Below, piece after piece: positions 3,116 through 40,235 of a stretch of DNA of 42,311 nt. Position numbers and translations under genes: made by a program. Below the pieces are notes generated by a model, which had not been told where the DNA came from, did not search any database, and was given only the letters and a program-made list of their open reading frames with translations. This DNA comes from Octopus bimaculoides. Its lineage: Eukaryota. The stretch covers positions 32,227,312 to 32,269,622 of the forward strand of contig NC_068992.1 in assembly GCF_001194135.2 (NCBI RefSeq), given 5' to 3'. Numbering within the stretch: position 1 is the first letter of the stretch; every line of letters starts with the position of its first letter.

Positions 3116-3288
3116 AAAGAAGGAGGAGGAGAAGAAGAAGAAGAAGAAGAAGAAGAAAAAGAAGAAGAAAAAGAAGAAGAAGAAGAAGAAGAAGAAGAAA
3201 AAGAAGAAGAAGAAGAAAAAGAAGAAGAAGAAGAAGAAGAAAAAGAAGAAGAAGAAGAAGAAGAAGAAGAAAAAGAAGAAGAAGAAGA
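3116..3288. repeat. (AAG)n microsatellite next to an assembly gap
   Basis: Seen directly. Confidence 0.95.
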
Positions 3289-3479
3289 ATGTAGGAGTGC
3301 CATGATAGTTGTGTGTTAAATGGTCAAGAGCCCTGAAAGTGACCCGTTGTAGATGGTAGTAGTGATTGAATAATGTCGATGTTTTGGCTGAACGCTATGT
3401 TTCTGTTTGGGGAATTTCGATCTGGGATTTGTGCAGATTTACAACCAAAATAATATGTTCAACAACAATACAGAAGCCG

Positions 3480-3890
3480 TCAATAAAAAAGAGCGAAAGA
3501 CCCAAGTTTGGGATAGGCGTAAATTTAATTGAGGAATCAGAGTTTTCTTTCAAACAGGGACAACGTTTCACAGTGAAAAGCAACTTCACATGTACTTCGG
3601 AGAACCTGATATACGCACTAACCTGCTCTGCGTGTCAAGAGCAATACATAGGCCAAACAAAAAAACAGTACGTAAAAGGATGGCTCTGCTCAGATCCCAG
3701 ATCAAAATTCCTCAAAACAGAAAAATAGCATTCACCCAACACATTGACATTTGCGCCAACAACAAAAAGCCTAGCTTCAGAATTTCCCCCCTCTACCAAT
3801 TCAGGTATGATACAACTTGTAGCCAACGAATTAGTAGAGACTCTCTTTATTACAAACTACACACCCCTTTTGAACGCGTCTACAACAAAT
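3480..3890 (+). mobile_element. Penelope-like element fragment: GIY-YIG endonuclease, frameshifted
   Basis: ORF 3366..3728 has NFTCTSENLIYALTCSACQEQYIGQT. It continues in other frames as KRMALLRSQI..QHIDIC and ETLFITNYTPLLN, the typical PLE GIY-YIG layout. Confidence 0.85.
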
Positions 3891-5077: not shown

Positions 5078-5323
5078 TTTCTTAAATATTTGCTCCCTAA
5101 TCGAAACTTGATTCGTTCTTTGTCATAGCTCCATATTGCTTATGTGTTCGGGCCATCTGATTTTAAGTATATATTTTAAGTATATATCTGATTTTAAGTA
5201 TACATATATATCAACAGGTGCTTGCGTAGTATACTTAAATTCAAATGGCCCGAACACATAAGGAATATGGAGCTATGGCAAAGAACGAATCAAGTTTCGA
5301 TTAGGGAGCAAATATTTAAGAAA
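5078..5323. repeat. Fold-back element: ~93-bp inverted arms (5078-5170 / 5231-5323) with a short AT-rich spacer
   Basis: TTTCTTAAATATTTGCTCCCTAATCGAAAC...GGCCATCTGATTTTAAGTAT is the reverse complement, with a few mismatches, of ATACTTAAATTCAAATGGCC...GTTTCGATTAGGGAGCAAATATTTAAGAAA. Confidence 0.9.
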
Positions 5324-6150: not shown

Positions 6151-8697
6151 AATTCTTAACGCTGAATCCTATCTATATTCTAGTAAATCAAGGATGGTAT
6201 TTTAATCTTGCACAGAATTTATCATATGCCAATACAGCATATGTAAGATGATAAAGACACATGTCCTACATCTTGTCTGGTTATTGAAGGAAGAAAGTGA
6301 CAGAGATTAGTGAATTACTACAATAAAAGTGTAAACATTTTTTCTCCACTTCGGTAAGAGGATTACAAACAGGATATCAAACACAAAGATATCTCACACG
6401 ACCTACTACAAACCACAATCGCAAAAACTAAATCGCAGGACAAAAAAAAAAACAAGAACCAGCAAGAGAATGCAAAGAATATTCAAATCTTTTCCGTGAA
6501 TATTATGTAGCAATGTGGTCGGATCATTGTACTATCTATTGCCAGTCATTTTACATCATATTACACCTGTAGCAGTTCGATGAATTTTGTATATTCCGCA
6601 TATAATTTCTTTGCGAAAATTTGCATGTTGTGTTGCATTGTATAATCTTGAGAAAAAGTTTTCGTTGATGGCATAAGCTCCTTCATCACAGTGATTCAAA
6701 TATGTTTTAAATAAAACATTCCTCTTACATATAGAGGGCTTTTTCAATTTTCTACGACCGTTATAAAGTGGTCACCTCTATGCACTTGTTACGAAGCTTA
6801 TGGATACTTTCGACTTCATCTTGAGCAATATCCGGTCCTTTAACCTTCATTTGATTGCAAACTGAAATATATCTTTCTTTGAGACCTTTCATGGTATGGA
6901 TTTATATCCATTCTTTAGACGTTTGGAATTTAAAATGTCAGATGAATTTCCACTTTACACAAGGCTGGTCTACGAGAGATATTGCACATATCTTCAAAGT
7001 TTCATTTATTTTTTTCTACTGGGTGAATATTGATTCTTTTCAACATATAACCACTGAGTTACATTTCGGATTTTAAATTTGCTTATATTATCCTTGTCCC
7101 TAGTTGAATTGTTTATTATTTTCAGGTATTGGCTAGCAATATGATTTCCTTCGTTTTTATAGTTTCTATATGACGTATTGTCACTCTATCGTTACCTGAA
7201 TTGTTAACCTTTAAGTATTAGAGTGTTTCCTCTTTTTCCTTACAGCACTTGCACTTGTTAGCTACCTTGAAATGATTAATAGCCTACAGATACAAGTGGT
7301 TACAGTAGATATTTCTGTATTCGTGCAATAGGTATTTGAGAATATAAGGGCGTGAACATTCTGTATCCACGATATTTCAACATACATTTTGGGTTGTGTG
7401 TTTGTAAAGTGCCTCATTATTGTTTGTAAAGTTCCTCATTATTTGAAAAATATTTCTCTCTAGTATCTTTAAATCCTTTTTCGTCTTGTTATTATTACAA
7501 ATATGAATGACACATTCGGATTACAGATATTATTAGATTATTTATCTATTTATATAATTAATTTTCTTTAAAATATCATTGCTACTTGTCCATGAATACA
7601 TTTTCTACGTTGTCTAAATCATTGGTTCATAATTATTTAGCATTGTAACTCTCATATATCTCTTAACTTATTATCAGTTTTCACTAATTTTCTTCGCAGT
7701 GGAGACGACACGTTACTTGATTTGATCGGAAAACCAATACATATTTTTTTAGTAAATGTATAGAGTGGGCAGATCTATTTACGTAGTTACCTACACCGTA
7801 CAACACAAAGTGTTTGACAACAGAAAATTTGTAGTAAAATTCTCGCCCATTTAACTCTAGTTCAAGTGACCAGCGACAACCTAATAAAAAGTGGTGAGAA
7901 AGATTTTGTTGAAAACATTCTGATTATTATATATATGGAGTTCTTCGCTACAGATTAACACATTTATATTACATTTTCATTCTAGGGTAAATGCCATACA
8001 TTTCTTCTTCTGGAGTCCACATTGTGCGGCAGTTAACTTTGTCTAGCCTTGACAGAAACTTTTTATCTCTTATCTTTGGAATTAGAAACGGTTTAGACAT
8101 GATGTTGTTCTTGTTGTTGTTGGCTGCGTCTCGTGTTTCCGAGCTTGCAATCCAGTTACTTTTCCTGGGTGTCTGAACCGCAGATGGTTTCGCAATCCAA
8201 GTGTTGCATGAAACATACGGGGACATTGTGGACAAGGGATAGAAGGGGTTGGTTTGGGAAGGAGAAGGCNNNNNNNNNNTGAGTTCAGTTCTTGCGACTC
8301 GGGCTTTCTCGAAGTCTGCTGAACCCGAGTTGATGGTGTGTCTCCAGAGGGGTCTGTTTGCCGAGATATCCTCCCAGTGTGCGGGGTCGATGTTGGTGCT
8401 TTTCAAGGTTGATTTGAGTTGGTCCTTGTACCGCCTCAAGAAGGCTCCACGAGGACGTTTTCCTTCAGACAGTCCACTGTAGAGACAGATCTTGGGAAAG
8501 CGGTATTCATTCATCCGACAGACGTGACCTGACCATCGGGGACGATGTTCAATGATCAAGGCTTCGATGCTCAGGAGACCTGATCTTTCAAGCACAGAGT
8601 TATTAGTGATGTGATTTTCCCAGTTGATGTTCAGGAAAGAGCGAAGTTTGGATTGATGGAAGCGCTCTATTTTCTTCAAGTCCTTACGGAAAACAGT

Positions 8698-10269
8698 CTA
8701 GATTTCACACCCGTACAGCAGAGTTGATACGACAACAGCCCGACAGACCATGAGCTTCGTTTTGAATGTCAGATCCTTGTTGCAAAAGACCCTGGCTTTG
8801 AGACGACCGAAAGAGGCATGACCTGATTGGATGCGATGTTCGATATCCCTACCAGATCCTGCAGTGGATGACAGAAAACTTCCAAGAAAGCAGAAATCCT
8901 CAACGACCTCAATTGATTGGTTGTTGATGGTGATATTGGAGCTATCAAGGTTGGTAAGAGGAGCTGGTTGAGTGAGCACTTTGGTTTTGGCGATGGTTAC
9001 TTTCAGGCCGAAGGTTTGATAAGCCCTGTTGAAGTTGTTTGCTGAAGTTTGGAGGTCCTCTGCAGTTGAAGCTGGGGCTGGGTTATCATCGGCGTATTGA
9101 AGCTCAGTGATCTTGTGCTTTCGACAGCGATGTTTTGATCGGAAACGCGACACGTTGAAAAGTCCGCCATCAAATCTACATCTGAGTTCCATTGCGGGGT
9201 TGTCTGTTGGAATTTCGGAGAGCATGGCAGCGATGTAGTGAGAAAACAGGGTTGGAGCAAGAACACATCCCTGCTTCAAGCCACAGGTGATCTTGAATTC
9301 TTCAGAGATTTCAGTCTGATAAAGGTCTCTTCCCCTCATGTCATCATGGAAACCCTTGATCAGCGAAATGAAGCCTCCAAGACAACCGTAACAATCCAGG
9401 ATATCCCACATAACCTCTGTTGGGACACTGTCGAATGCTTTTCCCAAGTGGTAGAAGATGAAAAAGACAGGTCTCTGCTGCTCCCGCCTCTTCTCCTGCA
9501 TCTGACGTGCACAACAGATTATGTCGATGATACCTCTTGACCTTCTGATACCACACTGTGACTCAGGAAAGACTGATTCAGCTGCCACTTGGAGACGTTT
9601 TGACAAGATTCGAACGATGATCTTGCCTGGGATTGAAAGCAGAGAGATGCCACGATGGTTACCACAAAGGCTCCTGTCTCCTTTCTTGAAGATGGTGACA
9701 ATGACTGCATCTTTGAGATCTTGAGGAATCTGTTTCTTCTCCCAGATCTGCAGAATCAGCATGAAGAGTCTTGCCCTAAGAGCAGATCCATCCGCTTTGA
9801 GGACTTCAAAGGGAATGTTGTAGGGTCCGGGAGCTTTGTTAGGTTTCATTTGATTGAAAGCGGTCATGAATTCGATATGGGGAGGGAGACGTGACAGTTC
9901 TGGTCTGACAGGGTGTTGAGGAATGTTCTTCAGCGGATCTTCAGAGGCAGTGGACGGGCGATTCAGCAAGGCTTCGAAATGTTCTTTCCAGCTATGAAGA
10001 ATCTCATCCTTCTCGGTGATGACAGTTGAGTTGTCTGCTGTTTTCAGCTGGAATGTTGATGATCGTTGGGGACCGTAAATTTCCTTGGTTCCAACAAAAA
10101 TGTTCCTCATGTCACGGCTGTCAGCATAGGATCGGAGTTGGACAGCTTTAGCTTGCCACAATTGATTCTCGATCTTGCGAATACTTCTTTGGCAGAGTGA
10201 TTTGGCTTCCTCGAATCTGGTGAGTTTCGTGGAACATGAGGGGTTCTTCAGATGTTCAATGAGTGCCAA
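8698..10269 (-). pseudogene. RTE reverse transcriptase domain (ORF fragment)
   Basis: KAPGPYNIP, NHRGISLLSIPGK, PESQCGIR, HLGKAFDSV (decayed DxxKAFD), GLKQGCVLAPTLF, LQYADD. The C-terminus continues in ORF 7969..8679. Confidence 0.92.
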
Positions 10270-10477
10270 TCGCTTGCCATCAACCAGGGTGGATATTTCA
10301 AAACTGTTTGAGTTGAACCAGTCTGTACGGGATCGCTTTTGAAAACCGATGTTCTCTCTCTCGCAGATTTGGTGATGATGTTCTTAAGTGTAATCCACTC
10401 TGCGTTGGGATAAGAGCTGTCACATGGGGGGTTTCATTTAACTGCTTTTCGACAGACTCTTGAAAAAGACGGACCTT

Positions 10478-11391
10478 CTAGAGGTCTCGGAGGGCAGTGG
10501 TGTCGTACTTCCTCCGGGAAGGTAGATTTGATCTTGGAGGGAATGTCTTCTTCTTCTTCAGAGTCCATCTTATCCGTGTGACTACCAGACGGTGGTTAGT
10601 CCAACAGTCGTCAGCAGACAGCATAGAACGAGTGATCAGAACATCCTTGAGATCACATTGTCTTGTGTTGGCATAGTCTAGGATGTACCAATGCTTGGAT
10701 CTGGGATGTTGCCATGTGGACTTGAAGCGGTTCCGTTGCCTGAAAGAGGTGTCTGTCACAGCAAGTTGGTGTTCAGAACACAGTCCAAGAAGAAGATGTC
10801 CATTTACATTGGAGTTCCCGACTCCGTCTTTCCCGACAACCTTCTCCCAAAGATGATGGTCTTTGCCAACCCTTTCGTTCAAGTAACCAAGTAGGAGAAT
10901 TTTATCTGAACTGGGGAGAGCTGTGAGTTGTTGGTCGTGTTAATGGTAGAACTCTTCTTTTATGTTGGAGCATAGATGGAAAAGATTGTGATGGAAGATG
11001 TTCAGAGGGGAATTCGGATGGACATGATTCTCTCCATGATGCAAGACGGAGTCAGATTGAAGGATTTTACGGGTTTTGTCTTGATTGCAAAACCCACCCC
11101 ATGCATATGAGGTTGCCCAGGCTCCTTTCCTTTCCAGAATATCGCATATCTGGAACCTTGTTATTCAAGCGAGCCTTCCCCTGAGAGCCAAGTTTTACTC
11201 AGAGCTGTGAGGTCCACATCGAAACAGCTCAGTTCGTGTGTGACGAGGGCTGTTCTTCTGGCAGGTCGATTTGTGTCCTTGTTATCTAGTTGTGTCCGTA
11301 CCTTCCAAGTTGCAAAGTTCGTTATAGTGTTTCGGTTGCAGAATGGGTGACCCGCTGAATGCAGTATTGCAGCCGGGTAGAGTTGCGACAT
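10478..11391 (-). pseudogene. RTE apurinic-like endonuclease domain (split over several frames)
   Basis: TWKVRT, LSKTWL (LSETRL), HGVGFAI, NERVGKD, TWQHPRSKHWYILDY, CWTNHRLV (DH motif decayed). Confidence 0.88.
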
Positions 11392-12664
11392 TCGATGTTT
11401 AGCCCATCTTTTCTAGGGCCTTCTTCACTTGAGGTGGGTTGCGAGAACCCTAAATAGGCTAGCCCAGTCGCGAACATAGCTACCACCCAACAGAGTTAAC
11501 GCAAGGTCAATGATTGAATGGTCATCACATGCTCACCTCCTACTTGTAGGATCGGGACTAGAGACTTCCAGCTCCATCAGGGTCAGTCCCCCTTATCCGT
11601 AGCCCGCCGCCATAGGACTTAGGCGGGGGAGTAGGAAAGGAAAGAAAATAACACTGGATGCCATGGCGTAATTTTGTTTAAGGTGGACCGCCACTTGCCA
11701 GGCAGAAGCCCACTCACTTGGATCAGAGGATGTCATCAGTGGCACCGTGGAGGAGACGTACTGACTTTGACCTGTGAGTTACAGCGAGCTGCCGTAGACC
11801 AGTTCCTTTAAGCCACGCCTTGTTGTAGCCAGCCCGCTTGGCATAGCCTTCTTCCGCTGTCACAGCCATTGAGAGACATAGATGTCGCTTCGTCTTCCTG
11901 ATCAACCGTTGAGGACTTGATGATTCTTTCTCGTAGCCTTAGCCTAAAGAGGCACCCTGCAAGGCAGCAGAGGAGGATCCAATTTTTACCCATTGCTGGA
12001 CCCCTAACAGGTGCCACCAAACCGGGCCAGAGCGGACCTCGGAGAAATGGCAATTAAGGGTGTCTCCACGCTCCCCATAACTCCTGTCCTCCCTGACTGG
12101 AGCTTCACCACCGTTTGCAGTTTTGAATCTTACCCAGGACATATTAGACGTGATATGTTTGATAAAACGCGTAATTCGGTTTACCTTATTTATAGATGCA
12201 TGACCAATGATTCCAAACTATACATATACTATTCAAGTAGTCAATGTGTCATTTTCCTCCTCAATACATCGATCATGGCATTGTTGATCACGCAGCCGTT
12301 CACTACATGATTTACATTCTATATTAATCTTTGCTCTTCTACAAACATAATTTTTTGTATAATTTTTCATGTGGAATAACTATGGTTGGTATACTTATTC
12401 CGCTTGTATAAGTAATTACAGTGGAGAATATTAATTAGCAAGATATATCGAAGCAAAATTTACAAATGCAGCATAAATATTAAAGGGAGCGTGTCTTTGC
12501 GTTCATATTTCGGGTTAAAGTGTGGGATTTTTAGTACCTAAGCTCTATATGAAAAAATAAAGAAACACAATAGTATTAACATGATAATATTAATAATTAA
12601 TAATATTAATAACTTGATAATATTAATATTAATATTCATAATGCTAACACTTTTTTCTCCCATA

Positions 12665-15870: not shown

Positions 15871-18699
15871 GTTATAGGTATATATAATTGAGTACATGTA
15901 CGTATGTAGAAATGTAGGAATATATTCATACATGTGCATATNNNNNNNNNNNNNNNNNNNNNNNNNNNNNNNNNNNNNNNNNNNNNNNNNNNNNNNNNNN
16001 NNNNNNNNNNNNNNNNNNNNNNNNNNNNNNNNNNNNNNNNNNNNNNNNNNNNNNNNNNNNNNNNNNNNNNNNNNNNNNNNNNNNNNNNNNNNNNNNNNNN
16101 NNNNNNNNNNNNNNNNNNNNNNNNNNNNNNNNNNNNNNNNNNNNNNNNNNNNNNNNNNNNNNNNNNNNNNNNNNNNNNNNNNNNNNNNNNNNNNNNNNNN
16201 NNNNNNNNNNNNNNNNNNNNNNNNNNNNNNNNNNNNNNNNNNNNNNNNNNNNNNNNNNNNNNNNNNNNNNNNNNNNNNNNNNNNNNNNNNNNNNNNNNNN
16301 NNNNNNNNNNNNNNNNNNNNNNNNNNNNNNNNNNNNNNNTATATATATACATATATATAATATGGATAGATGTATTTGTACTTTTGTGATTTGACACACG
16401 GCACTAACGCAGTTTCCTAATGTACGCTTACACACGAATTTCTAAGACGTCTTAGTGTCGTTGTATAAAATATTGCTGGTATATGCTGCACAATATTTAT
16501 TTTCATGTTATTACTCGCCAGTTGTATGAAATCTTCAGTTTTGAATAAACGTAAGAAAGACGCAAAAGAAATTACCTTAAAACGATATATGTACGAGAGT
16601 CATTCATCTATGGCTTTGGAATTGAGGTTTCCCGTTAGAGCCAGCTGTTGCGTCTTTCAGATTTACCAACGGTATTTGATATTTGTATCTTCTCTGAGAG
16701 AATACTCAGTAGCCTGTTATTCACTTAGATTTTCGTTGCTCAGTCTTCTTGTCCCTACCATATTCTACTATTAGACTTAGGAATTATTCTGTATCGCGGA
16801 CACAAACGTATGCTAACATATACGTGTCAGCTCATATTTTGCTATATAATTATCAGAGATTTTGCAGGGTACTTAAATATGTACTAGGAATGTGCTGAAG
16901 GAGTTTCCTAATTATTATGTACATCACTTAACAACATTGGAACTTCTTCTAGTGGAAGGATTAAATAACATTTCAAGTATACCTACACCAGCAAAATGTG
17001 AGATAATGACTTGAGTGTTAAAATAAATGTCATTTCTTGATATTTGTTATTGAAACCTGGGGTTTAGTATTGTGATATTTATGCAATATATCACTGTTAC
17101 TCTTACAATGTACGGAATTTACGATTAAATGCGTGAAATAGAAATCACCAAAACCACCAAATCATATTCAATTCTTAGTGAATAACATCTATCACTTAGA
17201 TTTGATAATTGACACATTCCATTAGATTGAATGATTGAAACCGCTATAACATCTCTATATGCACAACCTGCTCTCTTCAGAAAATGAAGTCGAAACATTC
17301 TAAGAAAAGACATTAAAGAGACAGAGAGGGAGAGAGAGAGGGCGAGAAAGAGAGGGGGATAACTAATAAATTGGAGGAAGAAGTAAACAATGACATTTCG
17401 GGATTATTTCTATCACATTGCCGATTTTTGCAAGTGCTGTGCATTCTTCTCTTATTACATTAAATGGCAGTCCAAACTAAGTATGAAAATTGCTGGCTAT
17501 ATGTGATTGCAAACAACTGTTCAAAGATAGGAAGAAAAAAGCTAACACTGTAAGCTGTAAGTTTATCAACAGAAATGTATGCAAAAGAATTATATAGTAC
17601 TTATGCCCCGTATACCGAAAAATGATGTCGTAGAAATGATAATAAAACAAGTAGATGAGTGGTTCATAAAAGGAGAAAGAAAGATATATTTGTGGAGGTG
17701 TGCATTAGAAAGAATTGTTTTCACCAATTCACCGAAATTTGCTTTTATTTAGACGTGAGGTTAATATAATGTGCTTAATACTATCACATATATGAAACAA
17801 CATAACATGTTAATTGGAAACATATTCTATATTGATGTTATTTCCAGTTAGTCATCAAATATATTGCGTGGTAATATCACTGTTGAACATTGTTGTACAG
17901 AAATTTAAATATAAAATATTGCTGACAGACACGACTTCCGAATACACCTTTTATAATGCATTTTTCAAGCTGTTTACAGCTCTACACTTTTCTCCCAGGT
18001 CAAGATGACAGTGATTATGTGATTTCGATGTCGGTACAACTTTAGTTTCTGACAATCGTTGGTTGGTGAGTAAATCTTGCTCTCTAAAGCCAGATCCGAT
18101 TAGAACATGTTTTGCTTTCTTCTTGCATTGCCTTATGAACTCTGCTGCACTCTTACGCAAAAGTTAAAAGTAATTGCATGAAGAGCTGAGTTGTCCCCTA
18201 CTGAACGACAGTTTATTATTCGGACGGTGAAGACACTATTTCAAACAAGGTCCGCTTAGACTAATCTTTTAACTGTAAGTGTAAGCTTACTATTCTCTGA
18301 TTTTATATACTACAGTAATTTCAATCAAAATCAAATTTATCAGGTTTCAGGGCCCATAATATTTTCATTGATGAATGAATATATATATATATATAAATAT
18401 ATATATATATATNNNNNNNNNNATGTAAGAAGAAAAAAGAGCGAAAATGCACATTGGGAATCAAAAAAGTAAAGGTTTTTTATGAAAAGTAATGATAGTT
18501 ATATACAGTTAGATGAACTAAGGTAGGAATAACAGTAATAACAATCATTATTGTGAATCGTTAAAGAGATTCAAACGTATACCGATTTCATAAAATTACT
18601 GTTCACTGGTATTGAATGTGCATCGATTACCGAACGAAGTCGGGTCTACTAGTCCCTGAGTAAAAGCATTTTGTGTAAGGGAAGTTAGTAGTTCTGGGT

Positions 18700-19660
18700 T
18701 TGGTTCAATTAGGGTAGATACAATAATGTAATGTGGATGATGTATGGGATGTATGAGGGTTAGTGGTAGTAATTGAAAGGTGAGTAGTGTTCTGAATCAT
18801 GTTATCTCTTCTTATTGAGTTGTGGAAGATATTTATTGATGAAAGTTGCCTCTTTATTCTTTCTTTGCTGTACTGAGGTGTTCTCTGAACATTGATAGAG
18901 GGGAAAATTAGGAAATTAGGATTAAGGATCATAGCACACCTTTCTATGTGTTCACTGACCTGTATCTGGCTGTATTGTGGGTGGCAGATTTGTTCTTTGT
19001 AAAGAGTGGTACTTCGACAGAGTGATATTCCTGTTTAGCCAATATACTGATTACCGCACTCTAAGCATGTAATGGCATAGATTGAGTTTTTCCGAGGCAC
19101 AGGTGAAATTTTATCTAATCTTAAATATTTCACCTTGTTTAAAGTGGAAATCTGAACCCTCCAACAGATGGAGGCATGTGCCACAGGTATGTCGACCACA
19201 TTATTTTTTTTACTTTTGGTTCCGTTGTTAATGGATATAGTCATGCGTTGGTTAATATTTTTTTCAATGATTTCGGTTGCATCTTGCTTTTGATAATTGT
19301 GTGTGAGCCTAAAATTTTGTTCATTGTTTTAACTCCTGTGAGGATGGGTACATTTTGGATGATAATATTGAAGGCTTCATTGTCTCTAGTGTTATGTGTA
19401 GTGATGCATGCTAGTATTTTAAAGTTTAGAGCAATCCTCTAAATACTTCTTCCAGTTCTTTAAATAGCAATGAAATGAGGTACCATATTTTTGTGGTAAT
19501 GGTTGTTATATTTTGAGTTCTGGATAACCCATTACAAGGTTCGCAATCACCGGGGCAGCTCGGCTTCCTATTGCAATTCCACAATAATGTCGATAGTAAA
19601 CTATATTGAACATGAAATAGTTGTTCAGTAGGAAAAATTTGATTGATGCGATTCTGAATC
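18700..19660 (-). mobile_element. Penelope-like element fragment: RT C-terminal half plus GIY-YIG, decayed
   Basis: YYRHYCGIAIGSRAAPVIANLVMGY (PLE RT motif G.AMGS..AP..ANL.MG), then FHFKQGEIFKI..NFTCAS and NSIYAITCLECGNQYIG; clearly related to the 3.5-kb copy. Confidence 0.85.
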
Positions 19661-19663
19661 TGT

Positions 19664-19699
<36 letters not shown>

Positions 19700-19701
19700 G
19701 A

Positions 19702-19786
19702 AGTGTATTGCCACTTAAGTGTGGCTGACCCCTAAGGGTGGATGTTACTGTTGTTTTAGCTCCAGGACACAGTAGTGTGTCGATAA
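19702..19786. repeat. Copy 2 of the 213-322 repeat, internally inverted, cut by a gap
   Basis: 19702-19760 is the reverse complement of ~264-322, while 19763-19786 matches 213-236 directly. Confidence 0.8.
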
Positions 19787-20332
19787 NNNNNNNNNNNNNN
19801 NNNNNNNNNNNNNNNNNNNNNNNNNNNNNNNNNNNNNNNNNNNNNNNNNNNNNNNNNNNNNNNNNNNNNNNNNNNNNNNNNNNNNNNNNNNNNNNNNNNN
19901 NNNNNNNNNNNNNNNNNNNNNNNNNNNNNNNNNNNNNNNNNNNNNNNNNNNNNNNNNNNNNNNNNNNNNNNNNNNNNNNNNNNNNNNNNNNNNNNNNNNN
20001 NNNNNNNNNNNNNNNNNNNNNNNNNNNNNNNNNNNNNNNNNNNNNNNNNNNNNATATATATATATATATATATACAGATATACACACACGTCAAATATAA
20101 GGATACAATCTTTCACAAAATCTCTATCGGTGGCCAGCATGGCCAGCATATTAAAATACCTTTTAAGATTAAAATTATAAACAATTATAAATAAGGGCAA
20201 AGGAAAGTAAATTTTGTATTTTCTATGCCAAAATGCTGAGAAATAGACTTTAGACCGTTTAACCACGTACAATATCTTTCACTATAAATACAAAACGCGG
20301 AAAGCAAGCTAATAGAAGTTTTTTAATCGTTA

Positions 20333-20393
20333 TTCCCGATTCGGGCCGATGTCTGGATTAATCCAAATGGATTCTTCCTTCTTCAGCGAGAAA
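20333..20393 (-). ncRNA. Type I hammerhead motif, unit 1 (GAAA to GACA and U16.1 to A; likely inactive)
   Basis: UUUCUCG-CUGAAGA-A-GGAAGAAUCC(AUUU)GGAUUAAUCC-A-GACA-UCGGCCCGA-AU-CGGGAA. Confidence 0.7.
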
Positions 20394-20800
20394 CGTAATG
20401 AGAATACATGCAATACTGACATATGCCAACGGGAAAAGTAGGCACAAAATCAAGAGTACATTTAAGTACCCCAAATGTATCTAAACAGAAATTCCGTAGT
20501 AAGCCTTAGCACATGTGTAGACGGTCAGGAAACTCACGTAAAGTTGTTAGCAGTTCCGAACTGAATGGCAATAAATTTACTTCTTATTAAAGGATAATAA
20601 TTTTAAAAATAAGAAATTATCGGTGGCCAGCATATTAAAATATCTATTAAAGTGAAAATTTTAGACATTTATAAATAAGGGCAAAAGAAAAGAAATGCTT
20701 TATGCCAATATGCCCTTAAATAGAGTTTAGATCGTTTAACCACATACAATATATTTCATTATAAATACACAGCCTGTTGAAACGTGGAAAGCAATCGTTA

Positions 20801-20860
20801 TGCCCGAATCGGACCGACTTCTGTATTAATCCAAAATGATTCTTCTTTCTTCGACCAGAA
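20801..20860 (-). ncRNA. Type I hammerhead motif, unit 2 (core decayed)
   Basis: UCGAAGA-A-AGAAGAAUCA(UUUU)GGAUUAAUAC-A-GAAG-UCGGUCCGA-UU-CGGGCA. Confidence 0.55.
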
Positions 20861-21219
20861 TATATGGAATACTTACATATACCCACGGAAAAAGCACACA
20901 TAAAGTAATGTGTACATTTATGCACCCCAAACATATCGAAGCAGAAATTCTGTAGCAAGTCTTAGCACACTTGTAGACGGTCAGAAAACTCATGTAAGGT
21001 GGTTGGCAGTGCCGAAGTGAATGTTAATTCATTACTTCTAATATAAGGATAAAATTTCTGAGAAAACAATAATTCTCGGTGGCCACTATATTAAAAACCT
21101 TTAAAGATGAAATTTATTAGCAAATATAACAAAGGGTAAAAGAAAAAAATCTTAATCCAATATGCTGAAAAATAGACTTTAGATTGTCTTATGACATATA
21201 ATATTTTACATTATAAATA

Positions 21220-21711
21220 ATCGGTCCGATTCGGGAATTATGAATTTTTAAAATTTCTGTTAGCTTGCTTTCGTCGTTTCAACACGCTGTGTATTTATAG
21301 TGAAAAGTATTGTACGTGGTTAGACAAGCAAAAGTATATTTTCAGCATAATGGCTAAGAATTTTTCCTTTCTTTTGTCTTTATTTATAAATGTTTATAAT
21401 TTTCACATTAGAAGGTATTTCGATATGCTAGCAACCCATAAGTTTTCTTTTTTTGGTGAAAAATTTCCTCCTTATTAGAAATGAATTTATTACCATTCAT
21501 TTCGGGACTGCTAACCACTTTACGTGAGCTTCCTGGCTGTCTACACGTGTGCTATGGCTTACTATGACATTTCCGTTTAGATATATTTGGGGTACTTAAA
21601 TGTACACATGATTTTGCGTCTGCTTTTTCCGTGGGTATATGTAAGTGTCCCATTTATTCTCATCGTATTTTTCGCTGAAGAAGGAAGAATCCTTTTGGAT
21701 TAATCCAGAAA
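21220..21711 (+). ncRNA. Unit-length monomer whose two ends are the two halves of an intact hammerhead
   Basis: The start 21220-21237 is ATCGGTCCGATTCGGGAA (stem III, AUU site, stem I 3'). The end 21668-21711 is TTTTTCG-CTGAAGA-A-GGAAGAATCC-TTTT-GGATTAATCC-A-GAAA. Confidence 0.75.
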
Positions 21712-21870
21712 TATGAATAGATTATGATGATGTTCAGTAAAATATTAATTATCTATATAGTTATTGAATTATGGTGCGAAGACAAAACGAGAATGTCCAG
21801 GAATAACATTTTCCCACTAAGCTCAGTGAAAGAGACCCAATGGCGTTCATAATTAGGAAACAGATTTTAA

Positions 21871-22085
21871 GGCGGTTAGCTAGCGAAATGGTTAACATGC
21901 GGGGAATAATGCTTAGCAGAATTTCGTCCGTCGCTACCTTCTGAGTTCAAATGCCACCGAGGTCGACATTGTCTTTCGTCCTTTCGGGATCAATTAAATA
22001 AGCAGCACTCGAGCAGTATGGTCGATGTAATCGACTTATTTCCTTCCCCGAAATTCCCGGTCGTGTTCCAAAATTTGAAACTAAT
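21871..22085 (+). mobile_element. tRNA-derived SINE
   Basis: Head GGCGGTTAGCTAGCGAAATGGTTAAC, B-box-like GAGTTCAAATGCC, core GAGGTCGAC..TGTCTTTCGTCCTTTCGGG; related copies occur elsewhere in the window. Confidence 0.7.
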
Positions 22086-23469
22086 AATTTGCGAAAAGAG
22101 CCGAAAATTAGTATAACATAAATAATATGTCACGAAAGTAATTTCAGCAATGACCATCTATTATAATGGTCGTATAGAGTTGTGCTTCTACATTTGTTCC
22201 ATAGAATAAATATACTAGTAACAGAAATTAACATAATGTTAACTGCTCTATAATATAATTCTGCCATGATAACTGATAGCTATAATGGAATATTCAGTGA
22301 AACACATCAGTTTATTTAATAATTTATTGCATTTACGTTTTGAAATCTTCTGGGGTCGAAATATTAACTTCATTATATCAAGGGAGTGAACCAAGACAGG
22401 AAGTGATCTATGTCTGATGTTTTTCAAATGTAACATCTACCGGTATATAACAATATTTTCATTACTTTACATTCTGCTTTTAACTATATTGGGCGAATGA
22501 TATCGATTTAAATTATTCAATCGTTCCGTGAGTATTACCATGTTTCACAACTTACATGAAAATGCACAGCGTTAAACATCCGTGTTCCTGTGGGGAACGC
22601 CATTTATTTTTATATATAGCTATATCAGTTGATAACATAATGGACATATTTCCAAATCTTAATACTTTGGATACAACCATCAAAGTATCTGTATAAATCT
22701 GAAATTCAATATGTGTAAATGTAAATGTAAAATTACATTTTCGTGCGAATCTCGAAAATGAATGAGTTTTCACTGGTTTCATAACGAAATACATTTTTCG
22801 TATATTCTTGATTAGAACCCCTAATAGCATCCCATTAGCATGTAAACATAAGTGTTATTTAGCATTAATGTCAAACGCTGAAACTTAAATAAAAATACTA
22901 AAAAATATTTTTTTTGCTGAAAATTGAGTGAAAGTGAGTAGGAATTAAAAGGAAGCTGATTCGTTTCTTCAATGCCAGTACAGTCGTTTCTTTATATTTC
23001 AAAAAGTAACTACTCTAATACTTCGCGTAATGATCTAGCGCCTTACACTGTTCTTTGATAGAACGAAGCACAGTAATTTCGCAAAATAAATGTTATACAT
23101 TCATAAATCTCTTTCAAGTGCATAATCACTTGCATGTGCCTGACTCTGATCTTTCCTTCAGTCACTCAATTAGCTTGCACATTGGTTTTCTGCACGCATT
23201 CTCAGTCCACAACTCCTCAATTACTCCTTTTTTTTTTTCTGAAAAGCTATCTAATTAATAAACTTCCAAATAAAATTGTAATTCAGCGAAAAGCTAGTTA
23301 AGAGTACGGTATATATTTATAGGAAAACAAATTCATTGTTTTCAACTATAGATGTTCTTAAATCATATTTGCTTTCATTTTCTGATTTTCTCAATTTTCG
23401 CATATAATTAGACGAGTCCAAATTTTGCAATATTTTCAAATGTGTTTGTTTGCGGCATATATACCTAGA

Positions 23470-38189: not shown

Positions 38190-40115
38190 TAAAGGGGTGA
38201 ACTGTTCTATTATTATGTATAAAAAGTTTTACACCATGAGTCAGGAAAACGCTGACCAGGAAAAACTATTAGAACTTCTTATCGACGAGGTAATAGACGA
38301 TATGTTCCCGGAATTAGAAAGTAATACAACCATTGAAATCGTAAATCGATACCAAATGGAGAAAGATGAGAATGACAAAGCAAACTTTGAGGCAATGGCT
38401 AGGATGAACATCGAAATTATAAATTTAAACTTGACTGAACTGGAAAAATTCAAATGCCCCATCAAATAAGAAGGAAGGAATGTAAAACTAACACCATCCG
38501 TTGAAGTTACGCATATGACCAAAAGAAAGACAATCGTTTACAAGATGTAATCGCTAAAGGAAAAACATGGCATCGAAGGGGGCCATAGAGAAGTGACTGC
38601 AGCCTAACTGGCAAGATAAAATCTACGTTTCATCGGTGGCAAATTTGCCACCGAGGAAGTCAAGTTCCCAACAGAAGAAATAGCCAGGTAACATTCCACA
38701 GCCTCCTTTATGTCATCAGATTTGTGCTCCTCCTCCTGGCTGACATTGCAAGGCCTATTTCCAAGGTAAATATGGAGGAAATACCACCAGAGATGGACGT
38801 AGCCTGACTGGTTGCGGCTATAAATTTAGACTGGGAGGATAAAATTACCATCCTCCAAGTAAAAAAGCCCACCAGCAGAATTAACCGGGACAGACCTTGG
38901 AGATATTAATTCAAGCAGCCTAGCAGGATTTAGAATACTCACCGACGATGTCATCATACCAGATGATATCAGACTGAGGGTTAAGGTGGAGGGACGTAAG
39001 CCTTGGTGCTACAAGTGTGGTCAAAAAGGTCGCATAAGGGCTGAATGCCCACCGACAGCCGCAACCCCNNNNNNNNNNCAAGCCACTACAACGGACGTCA
39101 ACCCACAGAAAACCACTATTGAGGAACAAACAACATGTAACGAACAAACAGAATACACCGACTAGACTAATGTTGCCCCCCCCCCCAAAAAAAAAGAAAG
39201 AAAAAATCCTCCTCCAACCCCCTTAGACACCAACACACACGCATCCGCTTCGTATGCTCAAGAACCACAAACCCCCCTCCCACCACCGATCAGAACATCT
39301 AACACCCACAGACACGAACGCATTTTTTTCTCACGTAAAAGCACCACAAACTCCACTCCGACAACCGCCCAAAACAATTATTAACCTAACATCCATTAAC
39401 ATGAATAACAATGAATTAAAAGGCAGGATAAAAAACAATAAAAACATAACATCATACAATACGGTTAACAATCCAAATATCCCCAAAATTGTACAAATAT
39501 TTAACATAAATAACATAACCTATGGACAATTAAAGACGATATACCCAGGAAATAAAAAAAAATTACCCGGACGCTTGTACAACCGATTCCTCAAAGGAGG
39601 CACCCCACAAACCACACCTCAAGACAATTAATAATGAGGTGGTTACCATCCCCATTCCTCAAAAACTAAAATCATAAGGAATCCTTGTCATGTTTGCACT
39701 TAATCTAAGATGTATAAATATACGTGGCCTGGGGTCGGATTGGAAACAAAACAGCCTCCTTAATGACCTCAGATCACATAGATTGGATTTAGTAGTTACT
39801 ACTAAAACTAGACTGAGTGGACTGCAAGATTTTCCACCCTTCCTAAATGGCTACAATAAATTTATTTCTCTAAGCCAACGTGGATGGAGAGGGGGAGTCG
39901 CTATTCAACTAAGGAGAAATTTGCATTTAGAAGTAAGAACATTCTTTATAGACCCGGAGGGCTTCTTGGTCGTATTTGATGTGATGCACAGCTGCGGTAT
40001 GTTCTTCAGGTTGGTGGCTGACTGTGCTCCCTGTGGACCAGGGCAGTCGGACTACTTCAGAAGCCTAGAGACATTTCTAGGGACATCGCACATTTTAGTG
40101 TTATTAAGTATGCTA
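38190..40115 (+). mobile_element. Tx1/L1-like LINE 5' half: decayed ORF1 with zinc knuckle and APE N-terminus
   Basis: VKVEGRKPWCYKCGQKGRIRAEC (CX2CX4[H to R]X4C) near 38990-39050. ORF 39690..40208 reads INIRGL..KQNSLLNDL..GGVAI..IDPEGFLVVFDV..FRLVADCAP..FRSLETFL. The start boundary is approximate. Confidence 0.8.
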
Positions 40116-40235
40116 GGACACAACAAACTCTTAAGCAAACCAAGTGCAGATATGAACACCATATGGGAACCGGTATTAAGGAAGAATATGAGAATATTAG
40201 ATTTATAAGCCCTAAAATTCACTCCATAATTGCCC

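What the first reader, a model, noticed from the sequence alone, without database searches (positions are those of the whole stretch)
20092..21712. Retrozyme-like array: ~490-nt tandem units, one hammerhead per unit
Seen: units spaced 493 and 456 bp, with no coding signal. Each complete unit has the same HHR: stem I UUU(C/U)UCG/CGGGAA, CUGAAGA, stem II GGA-AG-AAUCC/GGAUU-AA-UCC, GAAA, stem III AUCG(GUC)CGAU, AUU triplet. Different copies carry different inactivating changes, so the consensus core is fully intact. Established: metazoan non-LTR retrozymes are tandem repeats of a few hundred nt with type I HHRs that self-process to monomers and circular RNAs. Inference: this is a retrozyme family, with a unit at the long end of those I know.
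Basis: partly seen in the sequence, partly recalled or inferred. Interest (0 to 1): 0.85.

Follow-up and report, generated by a model that had tools for sequence, protein, structure and literature searches.

The report
Dead hammerhead-ribozyme repeat in octopus DNA
This is an old, mutated copy of a known kind of mobile repeat ("retrozyme") that carries a small self-cutting RNA motif once per ~490 bases. It sits in an octopus-type genome next to a relic of its presumed helper element, and none of the self-cutting motifs at this locus is still intact.

Summary
The picture needs three corrections. First, only about 2.3 units are head-to-tail, on the minus strand. The last unit (21219-21712, plus strand) is inverted, head-to-head. 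Second, no genomic HHR is intact. One has A14C and U16.1A, one lost stem I plus C3U4 in a 12-nt deletion, and one is split across the two ends of the inverted unit. Rfam finds no hammerhead at any threshold. Third, the reconstructed motif has CUGAAGA/GAAAU/AUU and three stems, but an A·A at 10.1/11.1 and a long, interrupted helix II. Chance is unlikely: 0.00175 expected hits per 40-kb window at the observed stem I and III strengths. Low GC (34%), no ORF, 5' truncation, an inverted head-to-head copy, flanking TA tracts and a Penelope-like element relic ~430 nt away all fit a decayed non-LTR retrozyme insertion in an Octopus genome. Unit length is ordinary for the class (51-972 bp published). 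No other family copies, RNA or cleavage data could be reached. I rate it a new member of a known kind, of modest interest.

The parts
20088..20349 (-). Unit Ma: the 3'-truncated last unit of the minus-strand head-to-tail run. Homology ends at about 20088-20090 against a (TG)n(TA)n tract (20054-20087) and a 267-N assembly gap (19787-20053).
20333..20393 (-). HHR-a, the only contiguous near-complete hammerhead-like motif. Stem I 5' is at 20393-20387 and CUGAAGA at 20386-20380. A10.1 is 20379, helix II is 20378-20355 and A11.1 is 20354. The G-A-C triplet at 20353-20351 carries A14->C. Helix III is 20350-20340 with U16.1->A at 20340, and U17 is 20339. The homologue of the cleavage site lies between 20339 and 20338. 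Stem I 3' is 20338-20333. The motif is predicted inactive.
   Evidence: no Rfam hit
20350..20817 (-). Unit Mb: a complete 468-nt unit. It lacks 21 nt that are present in P1 and Ma near the unit start.
20800..20853 (-). HHR-b, a wrecked motif. A 12-nt deletion removes the stem I 5' strand and C3U4. Helix II pairs are broken without compensation, and GAAA has become GAAG. Helix III and UUC|GGG are retained, with the cleavage-site homologue at 20807/20806.
20818..21219 (-). Unit Mc: the 5'-truncated first unit of the minus-strand run. It starts about 70 nt into the unit and is joined head-to-head to P1.
21219..21712 (+). Unit P1: one inverted, exactly unit-length copy (491 nt plus a 3-nt AAT terminal redundancy). 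It is circularly permuted, beginning at A14/A15.1 (the start of helix III) and ending at GAAAU, 11-12 nt upstream of the cleavage site.
21220..21238 (+). The 3' half of HHR-c: helix III AUCG-GUC-CGAU, U17 at 21231, the cleavage-site homologue at 21231/21232, and stem I 3' strand CGGGAAU. It is intact but separated from its 5' half.
21669..21712 (+). The 5' half of HHR-c: stem I UUUUCG (21669-21674), CUGAAGA (21675-21681), A10.1 (21682), helix II (21683-21706), A11.1 (21707) and GAAAU (21708-21712). It is intact and abuts unrelated flanking DNA.
18807..19661 (-). Context: a relic of a canonical EN+ Penelope-like element. It has the RT motif B/C region, an internal deletion, then the CCHH/GIY-YIG endonuclease, with stops and frameshifts. 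It lies on the same strand as the minus-strand units, about 430 nt from the array, and is bounded by TA tracts (19666-19695 and 18379-18412).

Best explanation
The locus is a fossil insertion of a hammerhead-bearing, non-autonomous tandem-repeat retroelement of the metazoan non-LTR 'retrozyme' type, in an Octopus genome (O. bimaculoides or a close relative).

Family-level mechanism. This is inferred from the published retrozyme model and is not shown here. Head-to-tail units are transcribed as multimers. At each unit junction a type I hammerhead forms and cleaves after AUU, just before CGGGAA. The ~491-nt monomers are ligated into circles by host RNA ligase. A Penelope-like element (PLE) RT/GIY-YIG endonuclease then copies the RNA back into DNA.

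What this locus shows directly. It has 2.3 head-to-tail units with a 5'-truncated first unit. An inverted copy is joined head-to-head at that 5' end, a TA microsatellite lies at the outer end, and a PLE relic lies 430 nt away. This is the insertion architecture described for PLE-type integration.

The inverted copy is exactly one unit long with a 3-nt terminal redundancy, and its ends lie 11-12 nt from the cleavage site. That is what copying once around a circular or multimeric template would give, not copying a cleaved linear monomer (inference).

The locus itself is dead. All three hammerheads are disabled, and the copies have drifted to 74-82% identity (pairwise JC 0.21-0.31).
For: Searches show no coding frame. 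GC is 34%, against the <45% given for the class.

The reconstructed junction motif has CUGAAGA, GAAAU and AUU, which meets the published catalytic-centre criteria CUGANGA/GAAAY/RUH. Stem I is 6 bp plus a U·U plus 5 bp. Helix II is 3 bp plus a 2x2 loop plus 5 bp, and helix III is 4 bp. The hammerhead fold costs -16.4 to -17.3 kcal/mol against an MFE of -17.9.

The chance expectation is 0.039 per window with the lenient descriptor and 0.00175 at the observed stem I and III strengths.

The 62-nt motif differs at 5 of 62 positions between the two best copies, against 81 of 403 in the rest of the unit (Fisher p=0.02).

A mismatch at the base of helix II has a published precedent. Axolotl HHR_Amex2 has a U·U there and still self-cleaves (22% in 1 h as a monomer, better as a dimer).

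The PLE insertion hallmarks are 5' truncation, partial tandems, an inverted 5'-truncated copy adjacent to the 5' end, and microsatellite bias. They match the Mc/P1 junction at 21219/21220 and the TA tract at 20054-20087.

PLE relics in the window are supported. PLEs are reported in Octopus genomes. The class co-occurs with PLEs and is related to their pLTRs. The circular fold of P1 has z=-2.5 against shuffles. The host is identified by a LINE that is 90-92% identical to O. bimaculoides CM046611.1.
Against: No contiguous intact hammerhead exists in the window. Rfam hammerhead models give nothing even at E<=10 on a 96-nt slice.

The 'intact' motif exists only after joining the two ends of P1 or taking a 3-copy majority. 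It has a non-canonical A·A at 10.1/11.1, a helix II far longer than in the four experimentally validated retrozyme hammerheads (4 bp), and a rare AUU triplet.

No compensatory changes were seen in any stem. HHR-b decayed without compensation.

No other family copy could be found, so copy number, multimers, intact copies and expression are all unknown.

Self-pairing of the unit is only moderate (62% paired, z=-2.5). The unit shares no detectable sequence with the neighbouring PLE relics.
Confidence: 0.65

Rival explanations
1. The repeats are not an independent retrozyme family. They are part of the terminal (pseudo-LTR-like) repeat structure of one complex Penelope-like element insertion, the one whose RT-EN relic lies just across the TA tracts and assembly gap on the same strand.
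For: The PLE relic B (19661->18807) has the same orientation as the minus-strand units and is only about 430 nt away, of which 267 nt are an assembly gap of uncertain true size. Canonical PLEs carry hammerheads in their pLTRs and form tandem/inverted structures. Retrozymes and pLTRs are phylogenetically intertwined.
Against: No similarity to the unit is found downstream of the EN of either PLE relic, where a pLTR should repeat. A different interspersed repeat (19696-19786, also present at 213-354) and two TA tracts lie between the relic and the array. The unit recurs three or more times at about 490 nt with no ORF between copies. Published text describes PLE hammerheads as minimal variants, whereas this motif has a 4-bp helix III.
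Confidence: 0.15
2. It is an ordinary locally duplicated or satellite-like repeat. The hammerhead resemblance is a coincidence of an AT-rich sequence, assembled by picking the best half-motifs from different copies.
For: No genomic copy is intact. Rfam is silent. There is no covariation, and the A·A at 10.1/11.1 fails a strict descriptor. The lenient descriptor would hit about once per Mb by chance (0.039 per 40 kb), which is thousands of times in a Gb-sized genome.
Against: At the observed stem strengths the chance rate is 0.00175 per 40 kb, before counting the 5 extra helix II pairs and the 5-bp distal stem I. All core elements occur in the right order, on the same strand as the unit, once per unit. 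Both halves are intact in P1, and the motif is less diverged than the rest of the unit (p=0.02). The PLE-style architecture and the neighbouring PLE relic are not expected for a plain duplication.
Confidence: 0.12
3. The locus is a currently active source of ~490-nt self-cleaved or circular RNA.
For: There is none beyond the family resemblance. P1's two half-motifs are intact.
Against: HHR-a has A14C and U16.1A. HHR-b lacks stem I and C3U4. HHR-c's halves are in the wrong order with no downstream unit. Two functional flanking hammerheads would be needed to release a monomer.
Confidence: 0.03

Closest known systems
Metazoan non-LTR retrozymes (Cervera & de la Peña 2020, PMC7229834; Li, Clavereau & Pollet 2026 preprint, 10.64898/2026.07.22.740005)
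   Same: Both are non-coding, low-GC, head-to-tail repeats of a few hundred nt with one type I hammerhead per unit. Short arrays are normal, since 75% of families have at most 7 units. Both co-exist with PLEs. The class is already known in a mollusc (mussel, ~350-390 bp). A mismatch at the base of helix II is known in axolotl HHR_Amex2.
   Different: Here every hammerhead is broken. Helix II is 10 positions long with an internal AG/AA loop, against 4 bp in the four validated examples. There is an A·A at 10.1/11.1 and an AUU triplet, and Rfam does not detect the motif. One unit is inverted. No RNA, circle or cleavage evidence exists. I found no cephalopod example in the searchable literature.
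Penelope-like element pseudo-LTRs with hammerheads (Craig et al. 2021, PMC8557442, and works cited there)
   Same: Both show tandem plus inverted head-to-head copies, 5' truncation and an association with microsatellites. A canonical EN+ PLE relic lies 430 nt away on the same strand.
   Different: There is no RT/EN ORF inside or between the units. The unit sequence is unrelated to the DNA flanking the two PLE relics. According to the cited papers, PLE hammerheads are minimal variants.
Classical hammerhead satellites: newt satellite 2 (~330 bp), Schistosoma Sm-alpha and the cave-cricket pDo500 (~500 bp) family. The last two are recalled from my own knowledge and were not checked here.
   Same: These are tandem DNA repeats transcribed into self-cleaving unit-length RNA with a type I hammerhead. 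pDo500 has a similar unit length.
   Different: Those are large, homogeneous arrays with demonstrated cleavage. This is a 3.3-unit degenerate locus with no sequence similarity tested or known.
Plant LTR retrozymes (PMC4918200)
   Same: They are non-autonomous retroelements that propagate through hammerhead-processed circular RNA.
   Different: Plant elements have type III hammerheads inside ~350-bp LTRs, GC above 55%, a PBS/PPT and Ty3-type mobilisation. None of these features applies here.

Membership tests
Metazoan non-LTR retrozyme | Head-to-tail tandem repeats (dimer or more) of a short non-coding unit (150-450 bp in PMC7229834; 51-972 bp in the 2026 preprint) | tested here: met
   There are 2.3 units head-to-tail on the minus strand with spacings of 452-491 nt, plus one inverted unit. 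No frame is open across copies.
Metazoan non-LTR retrozyme | A type I hammerhead in each unit with catalytic centre CUGANGA / GAAAY / RUH and 'perfect helix topology' | tested here: inconclusive
   Only the reconstructed motif (P1 ends joined, or the 3-copy majority) has CUGAAGA/GAAAU/AUU with three helices, and it has an A·A at 10.1/11.1. None of the 3 genomic motifs is intact. There is no Rfam hit.
Metazoan non-LTR retrozyme | Low GC content (<45%) | tested here: met
   GC is 34% in P1 and Mb.
Metazoan non-LTR retrozyme | Loop 1 - loop 2 tertiary contacts typical of type I hammerheads | tested here: inconclusive
   Stem I has an internal U·U (P1) or a bulge (HHR-a) 6 bp from the core. Helix II has an internal AG/AA loop and a UUUU cap. 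I could not test whether these interact. Mussel retrozyme hammerheads also lack the archetypal contacts.
Metazoan non-LTR retrozyme | Self-cleavage of the transcript at the predicted site | not testable with these tools
   This needs in vitro transcription of a consensus dimer.
Metazoan non-LTR retrozyme | Expression as unit-length linear and circular RNA | not testable with these tools
   No transcriptome access was available. A six-frame pseudo-protein search for assembled copies found nothing.
Metazoan non-LTR retrozyme | Highly self-paired predicted circular RNA | tested here: inconclusive
   The circular MFE of P1 is -109.7 kcal/mol, z=-2.5 against 200 dinucleotide shuffles, with 62% paired. 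Mb gives z=-1.9. The signal is moderate and not rod-like.
Metazoan non-LTR retrozyme | Many dispersed copies or arrays in the genome | not testable with these tools
   No eukaryotic genome collection was available. There are no further copies in the 42-kb window or in 22 kb of O. bimaculoides DNA. Pattern scans of other collections gave only chance hits.
Metazoan non-LTR retrozyme | Co-existence with autonomous Penelope-like elements in the same genome | tested here: met
   Two canonical EN+ PLE relics lie in the window, at 3441-3884 (+) and 19661->18807 (-). PLEs are reported in Octopus genomes.
PLE pseudo-LTR (part of an autonomous Penelope-like element) | The repeat is the terminal region of an element encoding RT + GIY-YIG EN, and recurs at the other end of that element | tested here: not met
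   No RT/EN lies within or between the units. The unit has no similarity to DNA downstream of either EN relic, and there is no hammerhead-like motif there. One caveat is that a 267-N gap separates the array from relic B.
Rfam Hammerhead families (RF00163 and relatives) | Score at or above the gathering threshold of a hammerhead covariance model | tested here: not met
   There was no hammerhead match at gathering score or at E<=10, for the whole window and for a 96-nt slice. The joined or consensus motif could not be submitted to the tool.

The most novel reading that the evidence does not exclude
An octopus-lineage retrozyme family carries an atypical hammerhead, with an A·A in place of the 10.1-11.1 pair, a 10-position interrupted helix II and an AUU cleavage triplet, which current covariance models miss. 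This locus would preserve a genomic footprint of its life cycle. That footprint is an exactly unit-length, circularly permuted copy with 3-nt terminal redundancy (reverse transcription once around a circle). It is integrated head-to-head with a 5'-truncated multimer at a TA microsatellite, beside a PLE relic, giving direct structural evidence that PLE machinery mobilises retrozyme circles in cephalopods.
Probability: 0.3. Interest if true: 0.5.

Novelty: new member of a known kind. Interest (0 to 1): 0.3.

Why it matters
If confirmed genome-wide, this would add cephalopods to the animals that carry hammerhead retrozymes. It would also supply a hammerhead variant that standard models overlook, which is useful for improving ribozyme searches. 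The head-to-head, unit-length, permuted insertion next to a PLE relic is a small piece of structural evidence for the still unproven idea that Penelope-like elements mobilise retrozyme RNA circles. Octopus genomes are rich in SINE, LINE and PLE elements and are studied for RNA-level regulation, so an abundant circular RNA family would be worth knowing about. This particular locus, however, is a dead relic and has no evident function.

Tried and rejected
(1) I ran Rfam at gathering score and at E<=10 on the window, on 2.8 kb and on 96 nt. There was no hammerhead, only microsatellite or hairpin artefacts.

(2) Tandem Repeats Finder did not report the array. ARAGORN found no tRNA-like part.

(3) I tried four routes to other family copies.
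- Exact-pattern scans of metagenome, prokaryote-genome and viral collections with the helix II motif, a conserved unit 20-mer and the helix II-III junction gave 0 hits or chance hits only. L001 matched over 22 nt only. L002-L005 are four bacterial 19-mer matches, about the number I estimate by chance from the collection's size, and their files could not be read for a BLAST check.
- A six-frame pseudo-protein of the units searched against 5.8 billion predicted proteins, hoping for spurious ORFs on assembled copies, gave nothing.
- Exact look-ups of window ORFs gave nothing.
- 22 kb of O. bimaculoides DNA fetched through a LINE protein held no copy.

(4) A word-indexed homologue search with the frameshift-corrected GIY-YIG peptide found nothing. 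The exhaustive HMMER search did find homologues.

(5) I considered reading the units as coding. A 38-aa frame is open in three copies, but stops occur in all frames and no homologues exist, so I rejected it.

(6) I considered whether the PLE relic extends through 19696-19786 into the gap. I rejected this because that stretch is a separate repeat also found rearranged at 213-354.

(7) A 6-nt match (ATGAAT) just after P1's end could mean a second unit with an 18-nt deletion. Homology does not continue, so I treated it as chance or microhomology.

(8) I considered building my own covariance model from the four published retrozyme hammerheads. I did not do it, because the only intact version of the motif (the joined P1 ends) cannot be given to the search tool.
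Full report
WHAT IS IN THE SEQUENCE

Reading 19500-22300 on both strands, a repeat search and blastn of one unit against the window show one repeat family, confined to 20088-21712.

In RNA sense there are three units head-to-tail on the minus strand:
- Mc, 21219->20818, is 5'-truncated and begins about 70 nt into the unit.
- Mb, 20817->20350, is complete at 468 nt.
- Ma, 20349->20088, is 3'-truncated.

A fourth unit, P1 (21219-21712), lies on the plus strand and is joined head-to-head to Mc.

Pairwise identities are 74-82%, giving JC distances of 0.21-0.31. Tandem Repeats Finder missed the array.

The left end abuts a (TG)n(TA)n tract (20054-20087) and a 267-N assembly gap, so the array could be longer in reality.

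All six frames of every unit are full of stops. A six-frame search found no protein relatives. GC is 34%.

THE HAMMERHEAD MOTIF

No genomic motif is intact.
- HHR-a (20393->20333, minus strand) is contiguous but has GAAA->GACA (A14C) and U16.1->A.
- HHR-b (20853->20800) lost the stem I 5' strand and C3U4 in a 12-nt deletion. It has GAAG in place of GAAA and three uncompensated breaks in helix II.
- HHR-c is split. Its intact 3' half (helix III, U17, CGGGAAU) is at 21220-21238 and its intact 5' half (stem I, CUGAAGA, helix II, GAAAU) is at 21669-21712.

The HHR-c halves lie at the two ends of P1 in the wrong order for a hammerhead. They form a contiguous motif only if P1 is circularised or repeated.

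My descriptor scan finds nothing in the real window, even with a 1-bp helix III allowed.

Rfam reports no hammerhead at gathering score, or at E<=10 on the whole window, on 2.8 kb, or on a 96-nt slice around HHR-a.

Joining P1 head-to-tail gives this motif: UUUUCG-CUGAAGA-A-GGAAGAAUCC-UUUU-GGAUUAAUCC-A-GAAA-UCGGUCCGAU-U|CGGGAA.

It passes the descriptor only if the pair next to the core (10.1-11.1) may be a mismatch, because two adenines face each other there.

Otherwise the motif meets the catalytic-centre criteria used by the group that defined the class, CUGANGA / GAAAY / RUH.

A mismatch at the base of helix II has a precedent. The cloned axolotl Ax353 unit reads CTGATGA-T-GCC...GGC-T-GAAA and self-cleaves, 22% in 1 h as a monomer and efficiently as a dimer.

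The hammerhead fold is within 0.6-1.5 kcal/mol of the MFE.

IS IT CHANCE?

In Markov simulations of the window, the lenient descriptor hits 0.039 times per 40 kb on both strands. That is about once per Mb, so it is not impressive on a genome scale.

Requiring the observed stem I (6/6) and helix III (>=4 bp) lowers this to 0.00175 per window, about 2e-5 per 491-nt unit. That figure does not yet count the five extra helix II pairs or the 5-bp distal stem I.

The 62 motif positions differ at 5 sites between P1 and HHR-a, against 81 of 403 in the rest of the unit (Fisher p=0.02).

It is weakened because two of the five differences hit core or closing positions, and because HHR-b decayed freely. 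That pattern is what a neutral fossil of a once-selected motif should look like. I saw no compensatory pair changes.

I conclude that the motif descends from a real hammerhead, with confidence of roughly 0.8. All copies at this locus are dead.

CONTEXT AND HOST

A LINE at 9058-12142 is 90-92% identical at the DNA level to a copy on Octopus bimaculoides chromosome CM046611.1. The best named protein hits are O. bimaculoides. A SINE-like repeat next to the array also recurs in that octopus locus. The window therefore comes from O. bimaculoides or a close relative.

- Relic A lies at 3441-3884 (+), next to an (AAG)n tract.
- Relic B lies at 19661->18807 (-).

The two endonuclease peptides are 44% identical (E=3e-23). 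Relic A has a sub-threshold GIY-YIG hit.

An exhaustive HMMER search found 316 homologues. The ~740-aa ones carry RVT_1 plus a C-terminal GIY-YIG. tblastn with these proteins maps RT motifs B/C and the endonuclease onto relic B.

Relic B is on the same strand as the minus-strand units and about 430 nt from the array. Two TA tracts, a fragment of another repeat and the assembly gap lie between them.

The 491-nt unit shares no detectable sequence with either relic or its flanks.

HOW IT MOST LIKELY WORKED

Published work describes metazoan non-LTR retrozymes as low-GC tandem repeats with type I hammerheads. They are transcribed, self-cleaved and circularised, and they co-occur with PLEs. A 2026 preprint derives them from PLE pseudo-LTRs and gives family lengths of 51-972 bp, with most families having at most 7 units per array.

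PLE insertions are characterised by four features:
- 5' truncation
- partial tandems
- an inverted 5'-truncated copy adjacent to the 5' end
- a bias for microsatellites

The locus shows all four.

P1 is exactly one unit plus a 3-nt (AAT) terminal redundancy, and its ends lie 11-12 nt upstream of the cleavage site. It was therefore not copied from a cleaved linear monomer. One turn around a circular or multimeric template would explain it. This last step is my inference.

Transcription, cleavage, ligation and PLE-mediated reverse transcription are all inferred from the class, and none is shown here.

RIVALS

The array could be part of the PLE relic's own terminal structure (0.15). Against this, the unit is absent downstream of both endonuclease relics, and another repeat intervenes.

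It could be an ordinary repeat with a coincidental motif (0.12). This is unlikely given the statistics and the architecture.

It could be a currently active locus (0.03). The sequence excludes this.

COMPARISON, NOVELTY, SCORE

The locus works like, and is best filed as, a degenerate member of the non-LTR retrozyme class. Membership is met for tandem non-coding units, low GC and PLE co-existence. It is inconclusive for the hammerhead itself and for self-pairing. It is untestable here for cleavage, circles and copy number.

The locus differs from validated examples in four ways: the A·A at 10.1/11.1, a long interrupted helix II (against 4 bp), the AUU triplet and the inverted unit.

The unit length is not unusual. 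I found no report of hammerheads or retrozymes in cephalopods in the searchable literature. The class is already documented in a mollusc and many other phyla.

My verdict is a new member of a known kind, with interest 0.3.

Noticed in passing
window 18807-19661 (- strand): This is a relic of a canonical EN+ Penelope-like element. It has the RT motif B/C region (CGIAIGSRAAPVIANLVMGY..., KYLEDC), an internal deletion, then the CCHH/GIY-YIG endonuclease (NSIYAITCLECGNQYIG), with stops and frameshifts. TA tracts bound it on both sides (19666-19695 and 18379-18412). It lies 430 nt from the hammerhead array, on the same strand.
   Followed up: yes
window 3441-3884 (+ strand): This is a second Penelope-like element relic, with only the frameshifted GIY-YIG endonuclease part. 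It is 5'-truncated against an (AAG)n microsatellite (3117-3289) and an N gap. It is 44% identical in protein to the relic at 19 kb.
   Followed up: yes
window 5078-5323: There is a near-perfect inverted repeat with 94-nt arms (96% complementary) and a 58-nt spacer, which looks like a foldback or MITE-like element. It causes spurious sub-threshold matches to plant miRNA families in Rfam (MIR841, 79 bits against a gathering score of 200).
   Followed up: partly
window 8116-12142 (- strand); also 39690-40208 (+) and 35567-35983 (-): The first is a LINE with an open 523-aa RVT_1 ORF (8698-10269), 90-92% identical in DNA to a copy on Octopus bimaculoides CM046611.1. This identifies the host lineage. 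The ORFs at 39690-40208 and 35567-35983 look to me like further LINE fragments, but neither had a Pfam hit.
   Followed up: partly
window 21875-22097 and 34051-34211: This is a SINE-like interspersed repeat directly right of the array. A second copy occurs in the window and three related copies occur in the 22-kb O. bimaculoides locus L006.
   Followed up: partly
window 19667-19786 and 213-354: A short repeat adjoining a TA tract recurs near the window start in rearranged, partly inverted form. It separates the PLE relic from the assembly gap. Its nature is unknown.
   Followed up: partly
window 20349-20587 vs 21474-21712: Because P1 is inverted relative to Mb and Mc, the locus contains 239-nt inverted arms (85% complementary, 886 nt apart). 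A read-through transcript would fold into a long imperfect double-stranded RNA, a possible small-RNA source.
   Followed up: no
window 20358-20474 (-), 20826-20993 (-), 21587-21703 (+): The same short reading frame (38-55 aa, ending ...AEEGRI(L/H)LD at the TAA inside helix II) is open in three unit copies. No homologues were found, and I judge it a coincidence of the AT-rich sequence.
   Followed up: partly
whole window: The window has a very high density of microsatellites (54 TRF rows, including long AAG, CTA, AAT and TTA tracts) and ten N gaps. This is typical of a short-read scaffold, and array lengths near gaps are uncertain.
   Followed up: no
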